DNA of 64,000 bases from assembly GCA_964188305.1 (NCBI GenBank), contig OZ076887.1. One strand, 5' to 3'. The notes under the pieces are model-generated. The model saw only the letters and a list, made by a program, of their open reading frames with translations, had not been told where the DNA came from and ran no database searches. Made by a program: the position numbers and the translations under genes. Positions 28,264 through 60,633 of the stretch are shown one piece after another. The stretch is from Podarcis bocagei. Its lineage: Eukaryota. Every line of letters begins with the position of its first letter. The stretch's first letter is position 1.

Positions 28264-31152
28264 TACTCAGTATTACCCTTTGGTGTACATGGGAAAATAT
28301 GCTCTACCAGAATGTTTTGTTGACAGTTTTGAGCTTTATTTAGGTATTTGCAGCTATTCCCCCCACCCCCATCTGACCTGTGATCCTACAGATTGGGCAT
28401 ATTTCGGGTGGGGACTGACATAAGTGTTTATTCCTTGAGCTGGAAAAGAGAGGAGGAGCTGAGCTCCATAGTAAACCGTCTTTGTTTTCCTCACTTTTTA
28501 GGTTGTTGGGTTGAGTGCCTTCTTCATGAGGCTTCAAATCTGAATCCAGGCTGGTAAGTTCTTCAGCACATCTCTTATAGGCTTAGCTGTGGGGATTGCC
28601 TCATACTTAGGCATTGCACTGCTCCACATTTGACCTTCCTTTAGTGAGAGTCGGCCAAAGAGGCCTTACCCAATCCCCTTTATGAACGAGATGTACATAA
28701 GAAGTCATCATATATCTGGTCACTACTTACCCATCTAGTCCAGTTTAGCCTATTTGTTGAGGCCCCCCAGGGAGTCTCACTCGTGTCATCTGCTCTCTGG
28801 TCCTTTTACCTGGAGATGATTCAGCCTGGGGCCTTCTGCATTCAAAACCATAGCTACTACTGAGCTAGGGTTCTCCCTACAATGAGAAATGTAGAGCGCT
28901 GAGGAAGCCCTTCTCAAGACTGACCCCAGATAAATAGAATATTACTTCCAGTAGGTCTCTTAAATAGCCAGCCTTCTTGTTGTTGTTTTTAGAAAACCGT
29001 AAGTCATTTCTGTTTAAACTGGTTTTCAAGAATATACTAGGACATGTTTAATTTGCAACGACTTATCTTTGCTCATTTTTGTGCTTGCTGTTATGATTTA
29101 ATTAATGGATAGTTTTTACAACCTCCTTTGATTAGCAGAGTAGCATGTTTTAATTCAGCGGGTTCAATACTGGGGAGGAGGTAGCAAAAGGCACGCACTT
29201 TCACCCATGAGTCATCAGGTTACTAGAGGCCTCACAGAAGCTTTGACTGCTGCTGTCTGGAAGACGTGGTGCCTGCAAAACATTGTCATTGGTATTGTAG
29301 CTGCCCTGCATTTACCTCCAGCTGTACAGATATGTTTTGACTTGTGTGTAATGGAATGCTGGAGGGAACCATGGGAGTAATGGGACAGTTCCAGGCAGTT
29401 TAAGCACAAAGGTCCTGTGCCTTCTTTACCCAAATTGTTATTGACTTGATAAGAACCCAGTGGCTCTACAGAGCAAAATGCCACAGAGAACCTGTGCTTG
29501 TTTCTTTGTCTTCGTTTACCTCTTGCTCTGCTCTAAGCAGGCATTACAATAGGCTGACTCTTGAGGGCTGCAAAACCTATGATGTTGGGGTTTTTTTATT
29601 GCACATTGGCTGAAGGAAATGCATTCCTTGTAGAGGAGGAAATGGACAAGAAACCGCTTGCTTGAAATGAAGGTGCCTTCAGCAAAGCATTCCCTGAAAT
29701 GTCATACTCTGGCCGTGTCTGTGCTTCCTGGTCCTTTAGCAGGTCTGACCTTTTCTGCCCTGACTGACCTTTGCTGTGAGCATGTGCTTCTCGTCACTTT
29801 CCTGCAGTGCCAAGCCTGTTGTTTGCCCTTGATATATGTCAGTAGTAGAAGTACTTGATGCTGTTACATCATTCTAGCGTAGTACTTAGAAACGGAAGCA
29901 AGCCAAGAGCTGTGCCGAATCCAGCACAGGCAAGTTCTGCGTGCAGTCCTTGTCTGTAGAGGAGTATCATCTGTTGAGGGCGTTCTAGTTGATGAGATTT
30001 CACAGAGCAACATTCCCTGTATCCTTTTAGCTACCTCGGGAAATGCTGTTTGTGGGCCACATGGTTTGTGAACTTTGCAGGGGTTGTGAGGACTGAAAGG
30101 CCCGAGGAAAGCTGTTTGATTCCAGCTCCCTTGTATATCATAGAAGGATTTCATGGCTGAGCTTCTGTCAAGCCTGGCTGCCTGATTTCTGGAAGGGTTT
30201 TGGACACTTGCATTTGTTGACAAGTTTATAGTCTTGGCCGGCAGCAGCATGATCACTGCCTTTGGCTAATTTTTTACCTACACAGCAGAAGGCAGAGGCC
30301 TCTTGTCTGTGCTTTCAGGAACATTTGCATCAGTCCTGATCCCCCCCCCCATCCCCATTATAAATTGCCTGCTGCCTCTGGCGAATGCTGTCCTGGAACC
30401 TGACACAGGTAGGTGCTGTTCATGGCTCATAGCTTTTACAGAATGTAGGCCTGAGTTGTTAAGCCCTGATGCATCAGCATAGCTCAGCAGCTTTCAGCAG
30501 GGTTCCTTCTGTCCTAGAAGTGCCTCCAAGCTTTGCCCTTAGAGAGAGTGGCAGCGAAAGTGTCTCTCTCTGCCGTTTTATCCCTGACACACTTGGGAGT
30601 AATTTGGCTTTAACTAATACAAGCACATAATTCCTCCAGCCTGTCGGCATGCTTAATGCCTGCCGTTCTCTCCCATGTAGTCCCTCTTGGCAGCGACAGC
30701 ACAAGATCAATAGCTCCTGCCTGGCCTGTCATTCCCGCCTGCAAGGTTTTCAGTTTCCATATCGGAAACGGCCTTTCCTAAAGAGCCCAATCAATATGCC
30801 GCTCTGAGGCCTGTTCTCGTTTGCTATATATAATCTGGACACACACTGTATGTTAGTGTGTGTATGTGCATAACACACAGAGAGAGAGGATGAGCCAATC
30901 CTCTGCTCTTGCTGGCTGGGAGGACGCAGCTGTGCTTTTTCTTCTTCCCTCCTTTTTTACTACAGCTGCTTTCCAAGGCTCTGGCCTGCCTCTTTCCTCG
31001 GTTCTCTGGATGTTGGGCTGCTGTGGGACACAGGATATCTGACTGCCTTGTGGGAACGTATCTGGGCTGAATGGGGCATATGTGACTCTCTCTCTCCTCT
31101 GCAATTTCTGCTCTCGGCAGGTGACCTTTTGTGCAAGTCAAGCGAGGGGACA

Positions 31153-31278
31153 ATGACGAGCACTGCACCTTCCAAGAAGCCTTACCGCAAGGCTCCTCCG
31201 CAGCACCGCGAGATCCGGCACGAGCTGCCCATCCTGCGTGACGACCAAGATGGTGTGATTTTGGCGGAGCAGAGTCAG
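31153..31278 (+). CDS. TJAP1: TJAP1 (tight junction-associated protein 1/Pilt) coding exon 1, short form
   Basis: Acceptor at 31120; MTSTAPSKKPYRKAPPQHRE matches the TJAP1 N-terminus; CAG|GTAACT phase-0 donor. Confidence 0.9.
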
Positions 31279-32610
31279 GTAACTGAAAGCCGGGCAGCTA
31301 AGGGCCTGGTCCCACTTCGTCAGCCGAAGGGGTTTAGTTACCCCAAGGCAGGCCAGCCCAAACAGCAGGTGGATGGGTATGAGGTTTGCAACGTTAACTT
31401 TTCTTCCTGGTCTCTGGAGTCGAGCAGCGACAAGGAGCTAGCAGGGTGCCGAGCAGAGCTGAACCTGAAGAGCCGGACTCTGTCGCCTGTGCTGCTTCAC
31501 AGCGGGAAAACGGGAAGGCGGAGTGTGAGGCACTGTCGGCACCCGAGCCGCGGGCGGCTCAGTAAGTTCATGAGTCGAAGCGTAGAGACGGTAGTGGTTT
31601 CTGGGGACGAAGGCCGGAGGCCGACTTGCTCCTTCAAGAGTAGAAGCCTGGAGCGCTCCCTCATGTTCAAAGAGCCTGCTGAGATCTTAGCACCTAGGAA
31701 GTTCCATGTCCCATCGACCCACCTGCCCCTCAAGGGCATCTTGAAGCAGACAGACATGCTGGAAGTGCGGCCTGAGAGCCTGCGCAAATCTCGCTCGGTG
31801 GAGACCCTGGCCCGTGGCCGCCGCTCACGGAAGTACAGCGACCCTCAGCTGTGCCTGAGCAGGCAGGACAAGCGCGGCTCTGAGCACAACAGCGGGAGCT
31901 GCTCCGACTCTGTCAGGCGGAAGGAGAAGATCACAGAGGAGAAGCTCCAGTTCTCCAAGTTCCTGGACGAGATCACCCACCGGGTGCTGAGCCCTGTCCA
32001 CTTGCACTCCTTGGGGGAGGGCAGAGCAGGAGAAGGGAGCCAGGACTCCCCCACTTCTCCCAGGTGCTCCACACCAGAAGGGCAGAAGGAGAGCCAGCCT
32101 GAAGGCACCAGGAGGACCGCTGAGAAAAGCCCTCGGCTCACTAGGAGGAAAGCAGAGCGGAGGCGCGAGGGTCTCGATGTGGCACCTTGCCGTAAGAAGC
32201 TGCCAGAGGAGATGGAGAGGGCTTCCAGGCTAAGGAGGAAGCCCGTCTTGGTGAGGGCGGACAGCAAGGAGAAGTTCCTCTCCATGGAGAAGCGGGTGGT
32301 GGATCTGTGTCAGTATCAGCTGCAGCACCTGGCAGAGCTGGGCTTGGCAAGGGTGTCTTCTGAGCAGCAGCATCTGCCTCCGTGGAAGACGCTGGGTCAG
32401 GAGGGAGGGAGGGACGAAGGGCAAGACCAGAGTGAATACCCACCGCGGCTCGTGTGGCTACAGCCCCTGGGCTGCAGAACTAGCCCGAGGCCAGTGCTGG
32501 AGCCGAGCTACTCGGGAAAAGGGTCCTTCTCCCCTCCCTCACGTTGGAGCCAGGAGGAGGGCAGTGCCTCACCCAGAGCCTCCCCTTCCTTCAGCTTAGC
32601 GCTAAACAAG
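31279..32610 (+). CDS. TJAP1: In-frame alternative extension of TJAP1 coding exon 1 (444 aa)
   Basis: Stop-free continuation to a second phase-0 donor AAG|GTAGGT at 32611; exon-like GC3-rich codons. Confidence 0.65.
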
Positions 32611-34288
32611 GTAGGTGAGTGAGGGACAGATGTTTGTCTGCCAAGTTTTGTCTGTCGTAGCTTAGAGCAGATCTCCTTAAGTCTCTGTGAGGTTTGACCA
32701 AAGGGGTTTTATGCCCAAATATTATCCACCCAACATGTTTCTTATCAGCTCATTCCCTGCTTGTGTTGATCCTTAAAATCGGAAACTGAGCCCACATGCT
32801 TGAATACTAAATACGTCATGCTTTCTGAGTAGCCCATTGATTTTCCTTCCTTCCTTTTGGCATCCAGGTTGCCCTGGGTTTGCTTCTTTGGAGATGCTTA
32901 CCTGTCGAGTGCCAGTATATGTGTTTGTGGCAGCTTACCTGTTTTGCTAAACTGCCCGGTAAATTCCTCAGGCACCTTTGTATGAGGCACAGTTCTTGAG
33001 AAAAACTGCCACTCACTCCCATCCATCACGGAAAGAGGTTCTTAAGCTGAGTGTACCCTAATGAAAAGGCGTTTTGTCTTTGCCCAGATATCTCTCCTGC
33101 CCTCTTATATCAGGCATTGCATGCTGGGAGATTGCCAGTTGCCCCATACTGTGTAATCTGATAGGGCAAATCTTGCTACAGTCAGTATGTTCAGGACCAC
33201 TGTCTTAGGCTGGCATGATTGGGCACCTGCCAAGGCCCTTTGCCCTAGCAAGGGGCCCATCATTGAAAGCCCCCTGGAGCTAGAGATGCAGTGAGCAAGC
33301 AAAAAGTAGCAGAGACACGGACAAACTGGTAGATAAGCAGGTGGTAGCAACAAAAATAAAAAGAATGGAATCAGGCAGTTGCAGTTTGCTGAGGGTGTTT
33401 TGCTCAAGGGTCCTCCCCAAAATCTGAACTCAGCAGTATTTGTCAGTATTGTTTAGGTATATTAAGTCGGTATGGTGTAGTGTTTGATTAGGTCTGGGAA
33501 GACCAGAGTTCAAATTCCTACAGAGGCACTAAGCTCACAGAATGACCTTCGACTGCTAACACTCTCTAGGCCTAACCTACCTCAAAGGCCTTTTTCTGAG
33601 GAGAAATTGGGGGGTGGGGAGAGGCCCTGCATGCTCCCCTGAGCTCCTTGGAGGAATAGCTGGTTGGGAGGGGGCCAGGAAATGTAAGAAATAATTAAAA
33701 ACAAAACAATGGCATGTAACTTGAAGTGTCTTCCTATACGATGGGGATTGTTTTAAGATTGTTGGTAGCGGTCTCATTTGTGTGGTGCTTTACCTACATG
33801 TATGGTGGCCTGAGCAGTATAGAGTACAGTATACAGTGTTTGCTGGCCAGTGGGTATCCTAAATGCAGTGTGGATGCTCATGGGCAGTAAAAGAGAACCA
33901 AAAAAGTGGCTGGGAGTATCTCCCTTGGTCTGTTCATTAACGAAGGATCATATTCACCACAGAGCAGGTCTTCGGTTTTCATAGTGAACACTGTAATGCT
34001 GTCAATTTAAAGCTGTCTAGTGACTGAGATAATTTAGGCTGGTATAGTGCAGGATTGAATCTTAACCGCCCTGAGATCTCTGGGTATAGGGTGGTATATA
34101 AATTCAATAAATAAAAAATAAATAAAATTAATCCCATCTGGGTGTGGTTGGACCAGAGCTCTTTGTATGAGAATTAGAGGGTGCTGTGGGTTATATCCAT
34201 CTGGCACTTGTATGCTTCAGTTTGCCACGCTGAAAACTTGCCCATATTTTTCAGTGAGATTCTTGCTTCTGTTTCCTTTTTTGCACAG

Positions 34289-52452: not shown

Positions 52453-52523
52453 TCACATCTCTGTTTCTGCTAGAAGACTTTCTCCAAGGCCCGAAGTTAC
52501 CAAGACCATCTGGGAACTAGAAT
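52453..52523 (-). CDS. LRRC73: LRRC73 final coding exon ((N)SSSQMVLVTSGLGESLLAETEM*)
   Basis: TTTTCTCCATTTCACAG acceptor, phase 1 matches the upstream donor at 60449; matches the LRRC73 C-terminus. Confidence 0.88.
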
Positions 52524-52545
52524 CTGTGAAATGGAGAAAAGGTGG

Positions 52546-53299
52546 TGTCAGAGCTGCTTCAAAATCCTAGCTCACAGAGGATCACGCTAGCCAGCGGTCA
52601 TTAAGTAAAAGTCTTTATTGAATTACAGTTTCCATTCTCACGCTGCTGTCTGCAACTCTACGTCTACTAGCTAGATCGGCGAGGCTCCGTCTGAGTCTCC
52701 GCCCCGTGCGCACCAACTTAATATCCTAGCCTTGCTCCACCTTTTCCTCCTGACTGTCCTCCTCTGGGTCCCTCTACCCCCCGGGGCTTCTTCCTTCCGG
52801 GATTCTTCTGACGCTGACCCGGACCCTTCTGCCTCCTTGCGCCGGGCTTTAGGACCCGGTTCCCTTTCGGGGCTGCTCACTGCGCCGCCCTCCTCTGCAT
52901 TTGAACTTGGCGCGCGCGCCCAACCTTCCACTTTCCTCTTAACCGTTTCTTCGCTCCCCGATGGAGGTGTGGCCACTCCTGACTCCTGCCCTCCCTCCTG
53001 TGGTGAGCTGCCAGCGCTTCCCCCCTGGCTCCTTTCCTCTTCCCTGCTTCCTGGCGGTGACGCTGGTCCCGATTTCCAGCTGCTCCCCCCTGAGTCTCCT
53101 CTGGCTCTATCTTCCTGGGGTGCCTCCCTAGACCCCCCCCCCTGCCCTGGCCACTGGCGCTCCTTTCTGTGAATCCTCTGATTCACTGGAAAGACTGGGA
53201 GATCTCGGGTCGTCGTCATCACTCATCCTTTCCTCTGTCTCCTCCCCTTCGCTCTCTGCTTCCTCCCTTGCCCGTGCCTCTGCACCTAAACCCCTGACA
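52546..53299 (-). repeat. 3' LTR (754 bp)
   Basis: Direct repeat of 58339-59091; AATAAA at 52614-52619 (-); PPT at 53300-53340. Confidence 0.95.
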
Positions 53300-56200
53300 T
53301 CCATCCCCCCCTCGAAGCCCCCCAGTCCCCCCTCCCCTCCTTCCGGTGCTGGAACTGGGGGCTGCTGTTGCAAAGGGACGAACGTCGGATATCGGTCGCT
53401 TCCCGTGGCAGGCCTCCAGCGGAACTCTTCCAGGTCTTCCTCTCTGCTCTCGTTGACGACAGTCACCTCCTCTTCCATCTCTGTGCCGCCGTGCTCGAAA
53501 CCAGGGTCGTCCCCGAAAATGTCCATGTCCGTCTCTCCCGCACTTCCTCCAGGCGGCGTTGCTCGGCCGGAACAGTCCAGCCACTTCCTGCGGAACTGCT
53601 CCTCCGGCCTATCGTCCCACCAATACGAGGGTTCTGAGACAGATCCCGAGGGTGACCCCTCCGGGGAACGGACGACTCGTGTTGGTTCCTCGTCCGAGTC
53701 GAACCCCCTGAACGTGCTGTCCGAAAGCGTGGGCGTGAAAAGCCAGTCGTCGAAAAAGTCTGCTGGCATAGGTCTATGTGGGAAGAGGGCATGAAACTCG
53801 TCTTTGAGCAGAGGTTCGTCTAAAGCGTAGTCCGGCACCCAGCTGTTCGCACTGGCCGGGGTGCCCTCCCTGGCGAGAAAGTATTCTACTCCCTCTTCCC
53901 CCCATCTGGAGTCCAAAATCTCCGTGACTTCGTTGATGCGCTCCTCCTGTGCCACTCCCGCGTGCCCCGTTCCTTCTCTGAGCGGACTCGGCGCCGTTCC
54001 GGGTTCCTGGAACCTGTGCGGTGCCTTGTAGGGAGTGAGCACCGATCTGTGGAACACCGGATGCATTCTGGAACCCTCCGGAAGCGCCAGCCTGAAAGCC
54101 ACCGGGTTGACCTGCTCTTCGACTTGGTAGGGCCCCAGTTGTTTATGCCCTAGTTTCTTCTTGGCCAACGACCTGGCCGGCACTGCGTGGGCTGCTAACC
54201 AGACCCAGTCTCCCACGTGGAGCTCTTCGCCAACCCTTCTGTGTTTGTCCGCTTGTACCTTGTATGCGTGTTTAGCCAGCTCCAGGTGGCGCCGCAGCTG
54301 ATCGTGGACTTCCTGCAGCTCCGACGCGAACGCATCTGCTGACTGCGGCTCCCCGTCTCCCCTGCATTCCAGTCCCGGAAAGGTTCTAGGGTGCCGCCCG
54401 TTGTTGGCGAAGAACGGCGTGACGCCCGTGGATACGTGCTTCGTGTTGTTGTAGGCAAACTCTGCAAGCGGCAGGTAATCCACCCACGTCGCAGGCTGTT
54501 GGTTTGCATAACATCTCAGGTACTGCTGCATGATGGCATTGGCTCGCTCCGCTTGCCCGTTGGTCTGCGGGTGTCTCGCCGACGCCAGATTGATCTTGAC
54601 GTTTAGGAAGCCCATCAGTTTCTGCCAGAAGTTCGAGATGAACTGCCGCCCGCGGTCGGACAGAATAGACCGTGGCAGACCGTGAACCTTGAACACGTGG
54701 TCTATGAACAGTTTGGCGGTTTGTTCCGCCGTGGCCACCTTAGCACACGGAATGAAATGCGCCATCTTGGAGAACAGGTCCACCACCACCAACACTGCCG
54801 TCTTGCCCCTTGAGCTGGGCAGATCCGTGACAAAGTCCAGAGCCACCCTTTCCCAAGGTTCGACCGGAGTTTGCAGCGGCTCCAACAGTCCAGCCGGCGG
54901 TTTGTGCACCGGCTTTGCCCTCTGGCAGGTGTCACACCTCGCTACGTAGTCTGCGACCTCCCCTCTCAATCCAGGCCACCAGAAATCCCTGGCTACTAAC
55001 TCCACCGTCTTCTCCTTGCCAAAGTGCCCGGCCGTGGGTGCGTCGTGCAGCTGCTGTAGCACCTTGGCTCGAAGTTCGTCACCCGGCACGTAGATGGCCC
55101 CTTTACGGATGAGCAAGCCATCTCGTAGCTGGAAACCGTCGGCCGCTGCCTTGCCCCCTCGCACCTCTGCCATCTTCGTTTGTGCGAAGGAGTCCCCCTG
55201 CAACGCTCGCCGCACCGCCTCTAGGTCCACGGTCGCCGCTGCGCACGCCCACACTGTCGGTGCAAAGATGTGCATGGCGGCCGCTGGTGTTGCGTCCTCC
55301 AGATACTGTGGCTTGCGGGAGAGAGCGTCTGCCATGATGTTGGTGTCCCCCGGGACATACTCTATTCGGAAGTCGAAGTCCGCAAAGAACTCAGCCCAAC
55401 GTATCTGCCTCTGGTTCAGGAACTGTGCCGTGCGCCAGTGTTCCAGATTCTTGTGGTCCGTGCAAACCTGCACCGTGTGCTTGGCGCCGATCAGAAAGTG
55501 CCTCCACGCCTTGAACGCTGCATGAATGGCCAGCAACTCCCTGTCCCATATGGTGTAGTTCTGCTCGGACTTGCTGAGCTTCCTGGAGTAAAACGCTCCC
55601 GGCCGCCACACGCCCTGCGGGTCCTTCTGCAGCAGGACCGCCCCCACTGCTCTGTCCGAAGCGTCTGTCTCCACCCTCATCGGCATGCTGGGGTTGACAT
55701 GAAGCAGCTGCTCTTCCGACGCGAAGAGACGCTTGAGGGCCTGAAAGGACTGCTCCGCCTGCTCTGTCCAGATGAACTTCTTCTTCTTGGAGCTAAGGGT
55801 GTCAGTGATGGCCGCCGTCTGCATCGCGAAGCCCTTGATAAACTTGCGATAGAAGTTCGCAAAGCCGACAAACCGTTGGACCTCCTTCCGGTTGCGTGGG
55901 CTCTTCCAATCCAACACCGCTCGAACCTTGGCGCTGTCCATGGCGAGCCCCTTGGCAGACAGCTTGTAGCCCAGAAAATCCACCTCCGGCACGTCAAATT
56001 GGCACTTCTCCAGCTTGGCGTAGAGCCTGTGTTGCTTTAGCCTGCCCAGCACTTCCTTGACGTGCTTGTCATGTTCTTGCTGCGACTCCGAAAAGATCAG
56101 GATGTCATCCAAGAAACAGACGCACGTCTTGTAGAGAAGTCCCGCCAACACGTGATGCATAAATGCTTGAAAAACGTGAGCGCCATTTTGCAGTCCAAAA

Positions 56201-57318
56201 GGCATAACTCTGTATTCGTAGGTACCCAGTGGCGTGAACATGGCTGTCTTCCACTCATCACCTTCCCGCATGCGAATGAGGTTGTACGCCCCCCGCAGGT
56301 CCAACTTGGTGAACACCTTTCCCTTCCGTACCTTCGCCAGGAGGTCGTCGATGCGGGGCATGGGGAAGTCCGACGGCTTGGTCACACTGTTCAAAATCCT
56401 GTAATCCACTACGAGTCTTTTTTGGGGCGTGTCTCGCTTCTTAACAAAGAATACAGGACTGCCCCCCACTGCCTTAGACTCCCGGATGAAACCGCGCTCC
56501 AAATTATGATCGATGAAGTCTTTGAGTTCCTGCAGTTCGTCCTCAGACATGGAATACAGCTTCCCTTTAGGCAGCGCCGCCCCCGGCAGCAGGTCAATTT
56601 TGCAGTCATATGGTCTGTGAGGGGGTAGCCTGTCCGCCTCCTTCTCGCAGAAAACTTCCAGAAATTCTGCGTACTTGTGGGGAATCGCTTGCAGCGTGCC
56701 TAGCAGCAGCTGTGACTCCTCTTCCTCCCCTTCCTGCCTGGGTACGATGCAGTGTTCAGCACAAAAGGAAGAGCCGAAGACCAGCTGCCTCTGGAACCAA
56801 GCCATCGTTGGGCTGTGCTTGTCCAGCCAACTCATACCCAATACAATGGGCGTGTCAGACAGTTGAGTGACGTTGAAGCTGATGACTTCCCTGTGATTCC
56901 CAAGTCGCATCACCATTGGTGGCGTCTGCTTCACCACTTGCCCCCCTAGCAGCTCCCTGCCATCCACCGTGACAACCTGCAGGGGCAGTGTGGCCGGCAG
57001 CAACTGCACAGCGTGCCTGTCGACAAATTCCTGCCCTATAAAGTCCGCGTTGCTGCCGGAGTCGATGGTGATTGGCACGTCCATGGTGATTCCATTGGGC
57101 AGCTGGAGAGATGCTGTGAGCCTCACTACTGGTTTGGGCGGGAGGGGGTTCACTGGCTGTAAAATTTCTGGGGACTGCGTCACTAACACGTCTGGCTGGG
57201 CCCCAGTGCCTCTTCCTCCAGCCAGACCTCGTCGTTTCCCTGCTGTGGTCCTCCCTGCTGCGTTGCTGCAGTCACCATTGCTGAGGCTGCAGTAAGCTTG
57301 TGGGGCCTCTGGGGACAC
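53128..57318 (-). CDS. pol: Gypsy Pol (protease, RT, RNase H, integrase, GPY/F, chromodomain-like, acidic tail), entered by -1 frameshift near 57234
   Basis: IDSGS; MPFGL and FLDD; ETDASD/RELLAI/DHKNL; H-H-C-C and D-D-E; GPYQV; uninterrupted 1396 codons. Confidence 0.95.
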   Translation of the reverse strand: MSPEAPQAYCSLSNGDCSNAAGRTTAGKRRGLAGGRGTGAQPDVLVTQSPEILQPVNPLPPKPVVRLTASLQLPNGITMDVPITIDSGSNADFIGQEFVDRHAVQLLPATLPLQVVTVDGRELLGGQVVKQTPPMVMRLGNHREVISFNVTQLSDTPIVLGMSWLDKHSPTMAWFQRQLVFGSSFCAEHCIVPRQEGEEEESQLLLGTLQAIPHKYAEFLEVFCEKEADRLPPHRPYDCKIDLLPGAALPKGKLYSMSEDELQELKDFIDHNLERGFIRESKAVGGSPVFFVKKRDTPQKRLVVDYRILNSVTKPSDFPMPRIDDLLAKVRKGKVFTKLDLRGAYNLIRMREGDEWKTAMFTPLGTYEYRVMPFGLQNGAHVFQAFMHHVLAGLLYKTCVCFLDDILIFSESQQEHDKHVKEVLGRLKQHRLYAKLEKCQFDVPEVDFLGYKLSAKGLAMDSAKVRAVLDWKSPRNRKEVQRFVGFANFYRKFIKGFAMQTAAITDTLSSKKKKFIWTEQAEQSFQALKRLFASEEQLLHVNPSMPMRVETDASDRAVGAVLLQKDPQGVWRPGAFYSRKLSKSEQNYTIWDRELLAIHAAFKAWRHFLIGAKHTVQVCTDHKNLEHWRTAQFLNQRQIRWAEFFADFDFRIEYVPGDTNIMADALSRKPQYLEDATPAAAMHIFAPTVWACAAATVDLEAVRRALQGDSFAQTKMAEVRGGKAAADGFQLRDGLLIRKGAIYVPGDELRAKVLQQLHDAPTAGHFGKEKTVELVARDFWWPGLRGEVADYVARCDTCQRAKPVHKPPAGLLEPLQTPVEPWERVALDFVTDLPSSRGKTAVLVVVDLFSKMAHFIPCAKVATAEQTAKLFIDHVFKVHGLPRSILSDRGRQFISNFWQKLMGFLNVKINLASARHPQTNGQAERANAIMQQYLRCYANQQPATWVDYLPLAEFAYNNTKHVSTGVTPFFANNGRHPRTFPGLECRGDGEPQSADAFASELQEVHDQLRRHLELAKHAYKVQADKHRRVGEELHVGDWVWLAAHAVPARSLAKKKLGHKQLGPYQVEEQVNPVAFRLALPEGSRMHPVFHRSVLTPYKAPHRFQEPGTAPSPLREGTGHAGVAQEERINEVTEILDSRWGEEGVEYFLAREGTPASANSWVPDYALDEPLLKDEFHALFPHRPMPADFFDDWLFTPTLSDSTFRGFDSDEEPTRVVRSPEGSPSGSVSEPSYWWDDRPEEQFRRKWLDCSGRATPPGGSAGETDMDIFGDDPGFEHGGTEMEEEVTVVNESREEDLEEFRWRPATGSDRYPTFVPLQQQPPVPAPEGGEGGLGGFEGGMDVRGLGAEARAREEAESEGEETEERMSDDDDPRSPSLSSESEDSQKGAPVARAGGGV
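57176..57240 (-). promoter_or_regulatory. -1 programmed ribosomal frameshift signal
   Basis: G GGA AAC (57240-57234), 6-nt spacer, 10-bp stem GTCTGGCTGG/CCAGCCAGAC. Confidence 0.85.
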
Positions 57319-58247
57319 TCTTTCGCCATATGCCCTGGCTGCTCACAGACGTAACACTTCCTGGTCCCTCTAGGAGGCTTCGCCTTCACTGCTGCCGGTG
57401 CTAGGGCTCTGGTTGCTGACTGAGCCCTTGCACCTCCAACCTCCATAGGTTCGGCTCCTCCTCCTGGCGGAGGCGTGGATTGCGCTCGCGCTGCTTCTCT
57501 GGGAAAGAAGGGGGGGCCCCCGGCTGGTTCGCGTCCTCCACGTCCTTCGTCCTTGCTCCACAGACGTCCTTCCAGCCTCACCCCCACAGCCAGTGCCCTC
57601 TGAACGACCTCCTGGGTGGTTCGGGGTCTCTCCCCCCTCGCTATCTCATCTTTAATCGAGTTGTGCAGTCCCTCCCAAAAGAGGTCTCTTACAGGAGCCG
57701 AATCCCTGTCCCATTCCAGGGCGCTGACCAAGGCGAAAAAGCGGGCATGATACTGTCTGACGCTGGCCCTCCCTTGTCTCAGCCCATGCACCTCCTTCCG
57801 TGCAAGATCAATGTCAATACTTGATAAGAAACACCCATCCATCGCTTTAATAAAGGCATCCGCATTCTGGAGCGCCGGATCGTTATCTCTCCATAAATTG
57901 CGCAACCATGCTTTCGCCTCCCCATGCAGATGGGACATGATGAACCCCACTCTCTCCTGTTCATCTCTAAAGTCTTTATGCAACAGTTGCAGTGCGCACA
58001 GTACGTCGGCTCTAAAGTTGGGATACTGTTGCAGGTTCCCATCGAAGTGAGAGAGCAGCCCGCCTGTCCGTCTCGCCAACCCAATTCCCTCCTGCCGGGG
58101 TGGTTGCTTTGCCAGTACGTCTAACCTGACCTGGAGATCCCTGCAGGCGGCAGCTGCCTCGTCCTCTCTCTTCCTGGATGCGAGAACCTCGGCGTTCAGT
58201 TGTGCCACTGCTTTTCTGAGGTCCTCTATCTGCTGCTCAGCCGTCAT
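57183..58247 (-). CDS. gag: Gypsy Gag (PEG10/RTL-like capsid plus CCHC knuckle)
   Basis: N-terminal coiled coil, LRQG motif, EPMEV, CYVCEQPGHMAKEC. Confidence 0.93.
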   Translation of the reverse strand: MTAEQQIEDLRKAVAQLNAEVLASRKREDEAAAACRDLQVRLDVLAKQPPRQEGIGLARRTGGLLSHFDGNLQQYPNFRADVLCALQLLHKDFRDEQERVGFIMSHLHGEAKAWLRNLWRDNDPALQNADAFIKAMDGCFLSSIDIDLARKEVHGLRQGRASVRQYHARFFALVSALEWDRDSAPVRDLFWEGLHNSIKDEIARGERPRTTQEVVQRALAVGVRLEGRLWSKDEGRGGREPAGGPPFFPREAARAQSTPPPGGGAEPMEVGGARAQSATRALAPAAVKAKPPRGTRKCYVCEQPGHMAKECPQRPHKLTAASAMVTAATQQGGPQQGNDEVWLEEEALGPSQTC

Positions 58248-58326
58248 GTCTCCTGCCGTTCGTGAGCTCGCTAGTGGGCGCCTGTTTCTCTCCCCTCCTC
58301 GAGGCTGCAGATGCCCACAATGTATG

Positions 58327-58336
58327 GACGGAGCCT
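58327..58336 (-). promoter_or_regulatory. Self-priming PBS
   Basis: AGGCTCCGTC, 2 nt after the 5' LTR, is complementary to GACGGAGCCT at LTR 58484-58475; no TGG tRNA-type PBS. Confidence 0.75.
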
Positions 58337-58338
58337 AC

Positions 58339-59091
58339 TGTCAGAGCTGCTTCAAAATCCTAGCTCACAGAGGATCACGCTAGCCAGCGGTCATTAAGTA
58401 AAAGTCTTTATTGAATTACAGTTTCCATTCTCACGCTGCTGTCTGCAACTCTACGTCTACTAGCTAGATCGGCGAGGCTCCGTCTGAGTCTCCGCCCCGT
58501 GCGCACCAACTTAATATCCTAGCCTTGCTCCACCTTTTCCTCCTGACTGTCCTCCTCTGGGTCCCTCTACCCCCCGGGGCTTCTTCCTTCCGGGATTCTT
58601 CTGACGCTGACCCGGACCCTTCTGCCTCCTTGCGCCGGGCTTTAGGACCCGGTTCCCTTTCGGGGCTGCTCACTGCGCCGCCCTCCTCTGCATTTGAACT
58701 TGGCGCGCGCGCCCAACCTTCCACTTTCCTCTTAACCGTTTCTTCGCTCCCCGATGGAGGTGTGGCCACTCCTGACTCCTGCCCTCCCTCCTGTGGTGAG
58801 CTGCCAGCGCTTCCCCCCTGGCTCCTTTCCTCTTCCCTGCTTCCTGGCGGTGACGCTGGTCCCGATTTCCAGCTGCTCCCCCCTGAGTCTCCTCTGGCTC
58901 TATCTTCCTGGGGTGCCTCCCTAGACCCCCCCCCTGCCCTGGCCACTGGCGCTCCTTTCTGTGAATCCTCTGATTCACTGGAAAGACTGGGAGATCTCGG
59001 GTCGTCGTCATCACTCATCCTTTCCTCTGTCTCCTCCCCTTCGCTCTCTGCTTCCTCCCTTGCCCGTGCCTCTGCACCTAAACCCCTGACA
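58339..59091 (-). repeat. 5' LTR (753 bp)
   Basis: TATTAA at 58516-58511, Inr-like TCAG with A at 58485, AATAAA at 58412-58407. Confidence 0.95.
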
Positions 59092-60165
59092 GGTGGTTTT
59101 AGCCGATGAACAGGATATGGAGGGGGACAACCGTGATTTGTAGCTGGATCCTAAGCACAGGGCTAGGAAGACTATTATAAAGGAGAACATGAAACGTTAA
59201 GTACAATTCAAGAAAGTACCAGCTTGAGTACTCCTGAAGTGAAGCACTTGGCAATTAAATAGATTCATTTTATGCCTAAAGTGTATAGCACAATACTAAC
59301 CATGTCTACGCAGAAGTGTCTCTTACTGAATTCAGTGGGGCTTACTCCCAGATAAGTGGGATTGCAATTGTAGCTGCAGACCATGACCACATAGAGTCCC
59401 ATCCCCTCCCTTCCTCCCCAACTCCATGGATTCCTATGTGCTGTTTCTGCAGACAGGCTGTGTAGTTCCACTAGTCTTCCTTAACCTAGTGCCCTCCCTG
59501 TTTCCAGCATCTGCCAGTTTGGTCAATGGTCAAGGATGATGAAAGTTCAAATAAGCACCAGGTTGGGGAAGGTAAGGGCTACACAAGCAGGCAGCTCCTC
59601 TGTTGTAATTATTGGGCTCCAAGTGCAGTATCCGAACACCCATTAGGATGTACTGCCTCTTCGTTTGAAGTCTGCACACAACAAAGTTTCCTTTTCCAAA
59701 ATACACAGTTAAAAAGGAGACCTGCTAATGTGAAGCTGGATTAAACTCTGTGCTTAGGCATCCACAGTTATCTTGCTCTAGTCTTTTCCTTTTCCTTTTG
59801 CTCTAGTATTTTCCTTTAACTCCTGGGAACAACGGTAGCTCTCTGCTTGATAGGCACATGAGATGTGCTTTGCAAAATCTTCGGGTTTCCATTTAAGGTT
59901 TTACCCTATAATTACACAAAAGAACCCAAATGGGATACCAGACTTTGGTTTTTGTTCAAACAGGAGATTACCACCCCTTCATAAGCCAATTTGTAGGGTT
60001 AATTTCAGAAAATCATCAGAGGCTGGATTGCATTTCAGTTTAGTGCTGCCAGTGCATTTGTGCCAAGGACTAGATTTCATAGTGTAGGAAAGTGTTTTCA
60101 TCCCTAACTAAGTTCTATTCTAATATCAGTACTGGGACAAAAGTATATGCTTCTATGTGTGCATT

Positions 60166-60304
60166 TTAGCTCAGCTGGTAGAGCATGAGACTCTTAATCT
60201 CAGGGTTGTGGATTCGAGACTCACAATGGGCAAAAGATTCCTGCACTGAGGGGGGTTGGACTAGATGATTCTCATGGTCCCTTCCAACCCTATGATTCTA
60301 TGAT
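60166..60304 (+). mobile_element. tRNA(Lys)-derived SINE with CR1-type tail
   Basis: TAGCTCAGCTGGTAGAGCATGAGACTCTTAATCTCAGGG head; GTTGGACTAGATG...ATGATTCTATGA tail. Confidence 0.75.
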
Positions 60305-60449: not shown

Positions 60450-60633
60450 TGCTCTGGCAGATCCAGTTGTTCTTCTCTCTTGCCATGACTTCACGAGTCT
60501 CCGTCTCGTCGTCTTCCTCACCCTCAGAAAGAAGGTCAGAGATCTGCTGCTGAAGTTCAGGGCTGATGTTGTTCTCTGCCAGGATCAGCGTCCGCAAAGC
60601 TGTCGGGTAGTTTTCCACCATATCCAGCAGGAT
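60450..60633 (-). CDS. LRRC73: LRRC73 penultimate coding exon (ILLDMVENYPTALRTLILAENNISPELQQQISDLLSEGEED...)
   Basis: TTCAG acceptor, A|GTAAGT donor, 184 nt. Confidence 0.9.

What the first reader, a model, noticed from the sequence alone, without database searches (positions are those of the whole stretch)
52524..52555. Gypsy element inserted 22 nt from the LRRC73 final acceptor, with its LTR end replacing the branch point at the same position
Seen: the 6.5 kb element sits in the last LRRC73 intron, in sense orientation, just upstream of the polypyrimidine tract. The reconstructed empty allele reads ggCTAAAA-ccacc-ttttctccatttcacAG; the filled allele reads ctCTGACA-ccacc-ttttctccatttcacAG. 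Both put a CTnA adenosine at -25, and the LTR version is a better yUnAy match. Inference: the LTR terminus rescues splicing, which could explain why the insertion is tolerated. However, two sense AATAAA signals (58407, 52614) may truncate LRRC73, and the 3' LTR promoter may fire into the last exon.
Basis: partly seen in the sequence, partly recalled or inferred. Interest (0 to 1): 0.7.

Follow-up and report, generated by a model that had tools for sequence, protein, structure and literature searches.

The report
Young Gypsy insertion beside LRRC73 acceptor
A very recent, full-length jumping gene (Ty3/gypsy) sits 22 bases in front of the last exon of a lizard's cilia gene LRRC73, and its end happens to carry a good substitute for the splicing signal it pushed away; whether that substitute is used could not be tested here.

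Summary
The sequence facts hold. A 6,546-bp Ty3/gypsy element lies in sense in the last LRRC73 intron. It has 753/754-nt LTRs that differ only by one G in a G-run, a CCACC target-site duplication and open gag and pol frames. Its last base is 22 nt from the acceptor. Homology confirms the acceptor: the last exon encodes a C-terminal peptide conserved from sharks to mammals.

The LTR end gives CTCTGAC, a full nnyTrAy match, with the A at -25. So it is not shown that the native branch point was at -25.

New here:
- LTR AGs at -31 and -34 shrink the AG-free zone from 70 to 30 nt. Any correct splicing of the filled allele must therefore branch in the LTR end or the duplication.
- The other LTR end (TGTCAG|G) puts a new AG just downstream of the displaced native branch-point candidates. 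Using it would give a truncated protein.

"Rescue explains tolerance" is untested. Identical LTRs indicate an insertion too young for selection to have judged it. The scan's first readers noted two similar LTR-near-acceptor cases elsewhere in this genome, both unchecked.

The parts
52546..59091 (-). Full-length Ty3/gypsy LTR retrotransposon, 6,546 bp, in sense with LRRC73
   Evidence: LTR pair and boundaries; Pfam domains of gag and pol; no other copy in the window; pol is 90% identical to Podarcis muralis Gypsy pol clusters
58339..59091 (-). 5' LTR (753 nt), starting TGTCAG. Its AG at 59087-59086 is the first AG downstream of the displaced native branch-point candidates. Sense AATAAA lies at 58412-58407
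   Evidence: Splicing to this AG would give ...WICQS-R-V-stop
52546..53299 (-). 3' LTR (754 nt), ending GCAGCTCTGACA. Sense AATAAA lies at 52619-52614. The G of each of two AG dinucleotides is at -34 (52557) and -31 (52554)
52546..52552 (-). LTR-terminal heptamer CTCTGAC plus the final A. Candidate branch adenosine is at 52548 (-25). It is the only full nnyTrAy match inside the 30-nt AG-free zone
   Evidence: motif definition from PMC8531310
52541..52545 (-). Target-site duplication CCACC, 3' copy (A at -20)
59092..59096 (-). Target-site duplication CCACC, 5' copy
59097..59112 (-). Displaced native intron end carrying the two TNA-type branch-point candidates of the empty allele: TGTTCAT (A 59107, formerly -33) and GGCTAAA (A 59099, formerly -25)
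52524..52540 (-). Untouched polypyrimidine tract and acceptor ttttctccatttcacAG
   Evidence: 13 of 14 pyrimidines at -18..-5
52454..52523 (-). Last coding exon of LRRC73, coding part: (N)SSSQMVLVTSGLGESLLAETEM then stop; the 3' UTR continues downstream
60450..60633 (-). Penultimate LRRC73 exon, ending ...WICQS with donor A|GTAAGT (GT at 60449-60448)
   Evidence: Read-through ORFs of birds and snakes show the same donor position
57183..58247 (-). gag ORF (354 aa)
53128..57318 (-). pol ORF (1,396 aa; protease, RT, RNase H, integrase, SH3_Tf2-1). It lies in the -1 frame relative to gag and runs 172 nt into the 3' LTR

Best explanation
A very young, structurally complete Ty3/gypsy retrotransposon integrated between the branch-point region and the polypyrimidine tract of the last LRRC73 intron of a wall lizard (lacertid). 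It left a 5-bp duplication.

Shown:
- The tract and the AG of the acceptor are untouched.
- Every native branch-point candidate now lies 6.5 kb upstream.
- The LTR's 6-bp terminal inverted repeat places CTCTGAC, with its A at -25, inside an AG-free zone cut from 70 to 30 nt.

Inferred:
- Any correct splicing of this allele must branch at the LTR end. The best site is -25; TTTTGAA at -36 is possible. The weak adenosines at -23 and -20 are the only other options.
- The allele is most likely a hypomorph rather than neutral. Some correct mRNA would be made through the LTR-derived branch point. The rest would be lost to the two functional-by-design LTR poly(A) signals that are transcribed before the acceptor, to the new CAG|G at the 5' LTR edge, or to internal acceptor-like sites.
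- Its presence in the assembly is explained by youth and drift, or by heterozygosity, not by demonstrated tolerance.
For: - Structure.
- Gene and acceptor identity, and deep conservation of the last-exon peptide.
- Branch-point and AG-exclusion scan of both alleles. It was read with the published motif nnyTrAy and the 18-37 nt range (PMC8531310), and with the first-AG scanning rule including bypass of AGs closer than 12-15 nt (PMC1431707).
- Hazards: sense AATAAA signals, a cryptic AG at the LTR start that gives R-V-stop, and acceptor-like sites at 57499 and 53774.
- Youth: no substitutions in 753 aligned LTR positions.
- Priors: full-length LTR elements are depleted within 2-5 kb of exons, and about 77% of the mutagenic mouse LTR insertions with known orientation are in sense (PMC3088655). 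A splice acceptor plus a poly(A) signal is the usual mode of damage (PMC1794541). Lizard Gypsy insertions are mostly singletons (PMC7561263).
Against: - There are no RNA, lariat or population data of any kind.
- The branch-point scoring is a transparent heuristic (motif match and U2 pairing count), not a trained predictor, and it rests on mammalian rules.
- The sense strand of the LTR is purine-rich (67% A+G) and has no strong donor. The element may therefore be less disruptive than mouse ERVs.
- U1-dependent suppression of intronic poly(A) sites could let most transcripts read through.
- Fixation cannot be excluded.
Confidence: 0.45

Rival explanations
1. First reader's reading. The LTR terminus fully restores the branch point at the same position, splicing is essentially normal, and this is why the insertion is tolerated.
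For: - CTCTGAC at -25 is a 5/5 match to yTrAy, better than the host GGCTAAA at 4/5.
- The tract and AG are intact.
- The LTR has no pyrimidine tract of its own and no strong donor.
- The in-window LRRC73 exons are intact.
Against: - Two sense poly(A) signals that the element itself must use lie upstream of the acceptor.
- Identical LTRs mean selection has had little time, so intact exons say nothing.
- The native branch point may have been at -33 rather than -25.
- Full-length sense LTR elements this close to exons are strongly depleted in mammals.
Confidence: 0.2
2. The filled allele makes no correct mRNA and is a null for the conserved C-terminal peptide. Transcripts would end in the 5' LTR, either unspliced (...WICQS-SKSAG...RAS*) or spliced to the LTR's first AG (...WICQS-RV*). 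The allele persists only because it is new, rare, heterozygous or recessive.
For: - The first AG downstream of the displaced native branch-point candidates is now the LTR's own CAG|G, at 13 and 21 nt, followed by U3-R with AATAAA.
- The read-through ORF is listed.
- Priors come from mouse ERV mutations.
- Gypsy insertions in anoles are mostly private.
Against: - The cryptic acceptor has a weak pyrimidine tract: 7 of 14 at -18..-5, counted by hand from the sequence.
- The authentic acceptor keeps a strong tract and gains a consensus branch point.
- Intronic poly(A) sites are often suppressed.
Confidence: 0.3
3. The insertion is an assembly artefact: a repeat copy wrongly placed.
For: No reads could be laid on the junctions.
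Against: The site shows a clean 5-bp duplication, exact TG...CA LTR boundaries, and a flank that reconstructs a normal intron end.
Confidence: 0.03

Closest known systems
Intronic sense-oriented ERV/LTR insertions in mouse (ETn, IAP) that disrupt genes through a cryptic acceptor plus LTR polyadenylation (PMC1794541, PMC3088655)
   Same: A full-length LTR element in sense, very close to a splice acceptor, with LTR poly(A) signals and acceptor-like sites in the path of the host transcript.
   Different: This is a Ty3/gypsy element of a lizard, not a retrovirus-derived ERV. No transcript data exist here. The LTR is purine-rich and has no strong donor.
SINE insertions just upstream of acceptors that cause exon skipping: dog FAM161A c.1590-15_-16ins238 (PMC3976383) and dog PMEL merle (PMC7349775)
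   Same: A retroelement landed between the branch-point region and the acceptor of a coding exon.
   Different: Those insertions fall inside or next to the pyrimidine tract and bring a poly(A)/poly(T) tail. Here the tract is intact and the inserted end carries a consensus branch-point heptamer.
Transposable elements that donate splicing signals, such as Alu exonization (general knowledge, not tested here)
   Same: Element sequence would act as a core splicing signal.
   Different: In exonization the element creates a new exon. Here an element end would serve a pre-existing, deeply conserved acceptor.
Recently active, mostly private Gypsy insertions of Anolis carolinensis (PMC7561263)
   Same: A young Gypsy element in a squamate, with identical LTRs and open frames.
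   Different: The species (a lacertid) and the family differ. The frequency of this insertion is unknown.

Membership tests
Ty3/gypsy (Metaviridae) LTR retrotransposon | Two direct LTRs bounded by TG...CA and flanked by a 4-6 bp target-site duplication | tested here: met
   753/754-nt LTRs reading TGTCAG...CTGACA, with CCACC on both sides
Ty3/gypsy (Metaviridae) LTR retrotransposon | pol domain order protease, RT, RNase H, integrase (integrase after RT) | tested here: met
   RVP_2 at residues 83-182, RVT_1 at 292-453, RT_RNaseH at 543-648, Integrase_H2C2 at 747-803, rve at 821-917, SH3_Tf2-1 at 1036-1097
Ty3/gypsy (Metaviridae) LTR retrotransposon | gag with a Ty3-type capsid and a zinc knuckle | tested here: met
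   Ty3_capsid, Retrotrans_gag and zf-CCHC
Ty3/gypsy (Metaviridae) LTR retrotransposon | Polypurine tract before the 3' LTR and a tRNA primer-binding site after the 5' LTR | tested here: inconclusive
   A purine-rich run GGAAGGAGGGGAGGGGGGACTGGGGGG... lies before the 3' LTR. No TGG directly follows the 5' LTR; the first is about 20 nt in. No tRNA comparison was made.
LRRC73 orthologue | Sequence homology of the exons to proteins named LRRC73 | tested here: met
   Hits to python, crocodile, bird, shark and teleost LRRC73 at E 1e-28 to 1e-15; alignment
LRRC73 orthologue | Conserved C-terminal peptide ...SSQMVL(M/V)TSGLG(D/E)SLLAETEM encoded by the last exon, joined in phase 1 after ...WICQ(N/S) | tested here: met
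   The exons were searched and aligned separately; the joined model was not built.
LRRC73 orthologue | Synteny with TJAP1 | tested here: inconclusive
   Known only from a first-reader note (s1-335535). The 524-aa ORF at 31048..32622 has no Pfam hit.
Vertebrate branch-point sequence (nnyTrAy, U2-type) | Heptamer with T at position 4 and A at position 6, pyrimidines at 3 and 7, purine at 5 | tested here: met
   CTCTGAC matches at all five positions (motif)
Vertebrate branch-point sequence (nnyTrAy, U2-type) | 18-37 nt upstream of the acceptor with no AG in between | tested here: met
   The A is at -25 and the nearest upstream AG ends at -31
Vertebrate branch-point sequence (nnyTrAy, U2-type) | Actually used for lariat formation | not testable with these tools

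The most novel reading that the evidence does not exclude
The terminal inverted repeat of this Gypsy family (TGTCAG...CTGACA) reads CTGACA at its downstream edge in either orientation. It could therefore act as a portable branch point that makes insertions into the branch-point-to-tract interval of host introns splice-compatible. That would be a built-in property lowering the cost of genic insertions. Two other first-reader notes in this genome place LTR ends within about 28 nt of last-exon acceptors (s1-362179, s1-345280). If real, they might be further instances, though my rough estimate puts three such cases in about 45 Mb at chance level.
Probability: 0.07. Interest if true: 0.6.

Novelty: new member of a known kind. 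Interest (0 to 1): 0.33.

Why it matters
If the filled allele still makes normal LRRC73 mRNA, it would be a clean natural example of a retrotransposon end serving as the branch point of a deeply conserved constitutive acceptor. It would also offer a ready-made test of how much branch-point identity and upstream context matter in a reptile.

If it does not, it is a natural truncation allele of a conserved motile-cilia protein of unknown function (bioRxiv 10.1101/2025.03.18.643967). That allele would remove a 22-residue tail conserved from sharks to mammals. Either way, it is a single young insertion and not a new principle.

Tried and rejected
I did not resend that stretch, or parts of it, to any public search tool. 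Afterwards it was only read, translated and aligned locally.
The plan to fetch orthologous last introns and empty sites from contigs of the Logan and NCBI LRRC73 hits failed.
- The Logan ORF hits are genomic read-through ORFs of birds and snakes. None comes from a lacertid and none is a spliced or chimeric transcript, so they say nothing about RNA.
- A Pfam scan to confirm TJAP1 synteny gave nothing.
- A search for other copies of the element in the window, to look at target-site preference, found none.
- Integrase target preference or microhomology was considered as the cause of the CTnA match. The 6-mers share 4 of 6 bases on one side (about 4% by chance, my calculation) and 2 of 6 on the other. 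With one copy this cannot be told from chance.
- The literature search found no report of an LTR terminus acting as a branch point. The library is limited to open-access text.
- The spliced LRRC73 model was not joined. Exons were handled separately by reference.

Full report
**What is there**

The gene runs on the minus strand. Two direct repeats of 753 and 754 nt lie at 59091..58339 and 53299..52546. They begin TGTCAG and end CTGACA, and differ only by one G in a G9/G10 run. Each outer edge is flanked by CCACC, at 59096-59092 and 52545-52541.

Between the repeats lie two open frames:
- A 354-aa frame with Ty3_capsid, Retrotrans_gag and zf-CCHC.
- A 1,396-aa frame in the -1 frame relative to the first, with protease, RT, RNase H, integrase and SH3_Tf2-1.

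This is a complete 6,546-bp Ty3/gypsy element with a 5-bp target-site duplication. Its pol is 90% identical to clusters annotated in Podarcis muralis. No substitutions in 753 aligned LTR positions means a very recent insertion. With assumed squamate rates near 1e-9 per site per year, the 95% bound is roughly 1-2.5 million years, and the true age is probably far less; this estimate is inference.

**The host gene**

- The ORF containing the penultimate exon (exon 60633..60450, ending ...WICQS, donor A|GTAAGT) hits proteins named LRRC73 in python, crocodile, birds, shark and teleosts.
- Read-through ORFs of birds and snakes show the same donor position.
- The sequence after the acceptor at 52524/52523 encodes SSSQMVLVTSGLGESLLAETEM and a stop. 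This equals the python C-terminus and is nearly invariant from shark to mammals.

The exons were searched and aligned one by one. The joined model was not built.

**The branch-point claim**

The last LTR base is at -23. The duplication occupies -22..-18, and the untouched tract and AG occupy -17..-1. The filled allele reads CTCTGAC with the A at -25. The reconstructed empty allele reads GGCTAAA with the A at -25.

| Allele | Position of A | Heptamer | Match to yTrAy |
|---|---|---|---|
| Filled | -25 | CTCTGAC | 5 of 5 |
| Filled | -36 | TTTTGAA | 4 of 5 |
| Empty | -25 | GGCTAAA | 4 of 5 |
| Empty | -33 | TGTTCAT | 4 of 5 (5 of 6 U2 pairs) |

The motif is the published nnyTrAy, with T at position 4 in 92% of predicted sites and branch points usually 18-37 nt upstream (PMC8531310).

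The empty allele, however, has a second, equally good candidate at -33, plus a 70-nt AG-free zone with more distant options. That the native branch point was at -25 is an assumption. The register match of CTnA between host flank and LTR end has a chance level of about 2-6% per position and was noticed after the fact.

**What the tools add**

1. AG-exclusion logic.
   - The LTR brings AGs whose G lies at -31 and -34, among others further up. This cuts the AG-free zone to 30 nt.
   - Under the first-AG scanning rule, only AGs closer than about 12-15 nt to the branch site are bypassed (PMC1431707).
   - A branch point that still selects the true AG must therefore be at -25, -23, -20 or at most about -36. 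All of these are LTR or duplication bases.
   - So, conditional on correct splicing, an LTR-derived branch point is close to a logical necessity, and CTGAC is by far the best candidate.
2. The other end of the element.
   - The terminal inverted repeat also acts at the 5' end. The LTR starts TGTCAG|G, which is now the first AG downstream of the displaced native candidates, 13 and 21 nt away.
   - Its pyrimidine tract is weak, but it is transcribed 6.5 kb before the true acceptor.
   - It is followed by U3-R with AATAAA at 58412.
   - Its use would give ...WICQS-R-V-stop.
3. Further hazards in the sense strand.
   - Acceptor-like sites lie at 57499 and 53774.
   - ATTAAA lies at 57851 and 57656.
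   - A second AATAAA lies 95 nt before the true acceptor.
   - Use of the AG at -31 would add 30 nt in frame.
   - In mitigation, the LTR sense strand is 67% purine and has no strong donor.

**Interpretation**

Published surveys bear on how such insertions usually fare:
- Full-length LTR elements are depleted within 2-5 kb of exons.
- Most mutagenic mouse LTR insertions are in sense and close to exons (PMC3088655).
- They act through an acceptor plus a poly(A) signal or donor (PMC1794541).
- Retroelements landing 15-16 nt from an acceptor can cause exon skipping (PMC3976383).
- In the green anole, Gypsy insertions are mostly private and almost never reach high frequency (PMC7561263).

Against this background, one insertion with identical LTRs in one assembly is not evidence of tolerance. 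My best reading is a hypomorphic allele: some correct mRNA through the LTR branch point, with losses to polyadenylation and cryptic splicing. It would be kept by youth or drift. I give this 0.45, full rescue 0.2, an effectively null allele 0.3, and an assembly artefact 0.03.

**Limits**

- Splicing, polyadenylation, allele frequency and cross-species conservation of the intron end are therefore all untested.
- The branch-point scoring is a simple motif and U2-pairing count based on mammalian rules.

**Other notes of the scan**

Two first-reader notes in the same genome describe solo LTRs about 28 nt before the last GRAMD1B exon and at the last LRP8 intron's branch point. They are unchecked. 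A rough estimate gives a few such cases by chance, assuming about 5,500 acceptors and a few thousand LTR ends in about 45 Mb.

**Verdict**

The mechanism is plausible and partly sharpened, but unproven. It is an ordinary kind of event with a neat detail.

Noticed in passing
window 59086-59091 (minus strand): The LTR's first six bases, TGTCAG, create a CAG|G that is now the first AG downstream of the displaced native branch-point candidates (13 and 21 nt away). Splicing to it would give ...WICQS-R-V-stop and end at the 5' LTR AATAAA.
   Followed up: partly
window 52671-53222 and 58464-59018 (minus strand); pol ORF end at 53128: The pol frame runs 172 nt into the 3' LTR, and a 183/184-aa ORF fills most of U3 in both LTRs. 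This was also flagged by the scan as s1-335574.
   Followed up: no
window 52546-53299 (minus strand): The LTR sense strand is strongly purine-rich (A+G 67%, T 12.6%), so it offers almost no pyrimidine tracts to the host spliceosome.
   Followed up: partly
pol ORF 53128-57318 (minus strand): The closest relatives, Podarcis muralis clusters at 78-90% identity, lack the Pfam chromodomain that more distant relatives (40-58% identity) carry. The integrase tail of this lineage has been replaced or has diverged.
   Followed up: no
protein P0016 (Python bivittatus LRRC73, partial): The python gene model has 16 extra residues (SVEGYPTSYTVHLRNS) between ...WICQS and NSSSQMV. This may reflect an upstream alternative acceptor or a prediction artefact.
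   Followed up: no
window about 60160-60300 (minus strand): A squamate-type SINE-like stretch (catagaatcatagggttggaagggacc...) lies in the same intron, about 150 nt after the donor.
   Followed up: no
   Followed up: partly
other pieces of the same genome (s1-362179, s1-345280): Two further first-reader notes describe LTR ends within about 28 nt of last-exon acceptors (GRAMD1B, LRP8). Together with this case they could be checked for a common family or a target preference. A rough estimate puts the count at chance level.
   Followed up: no
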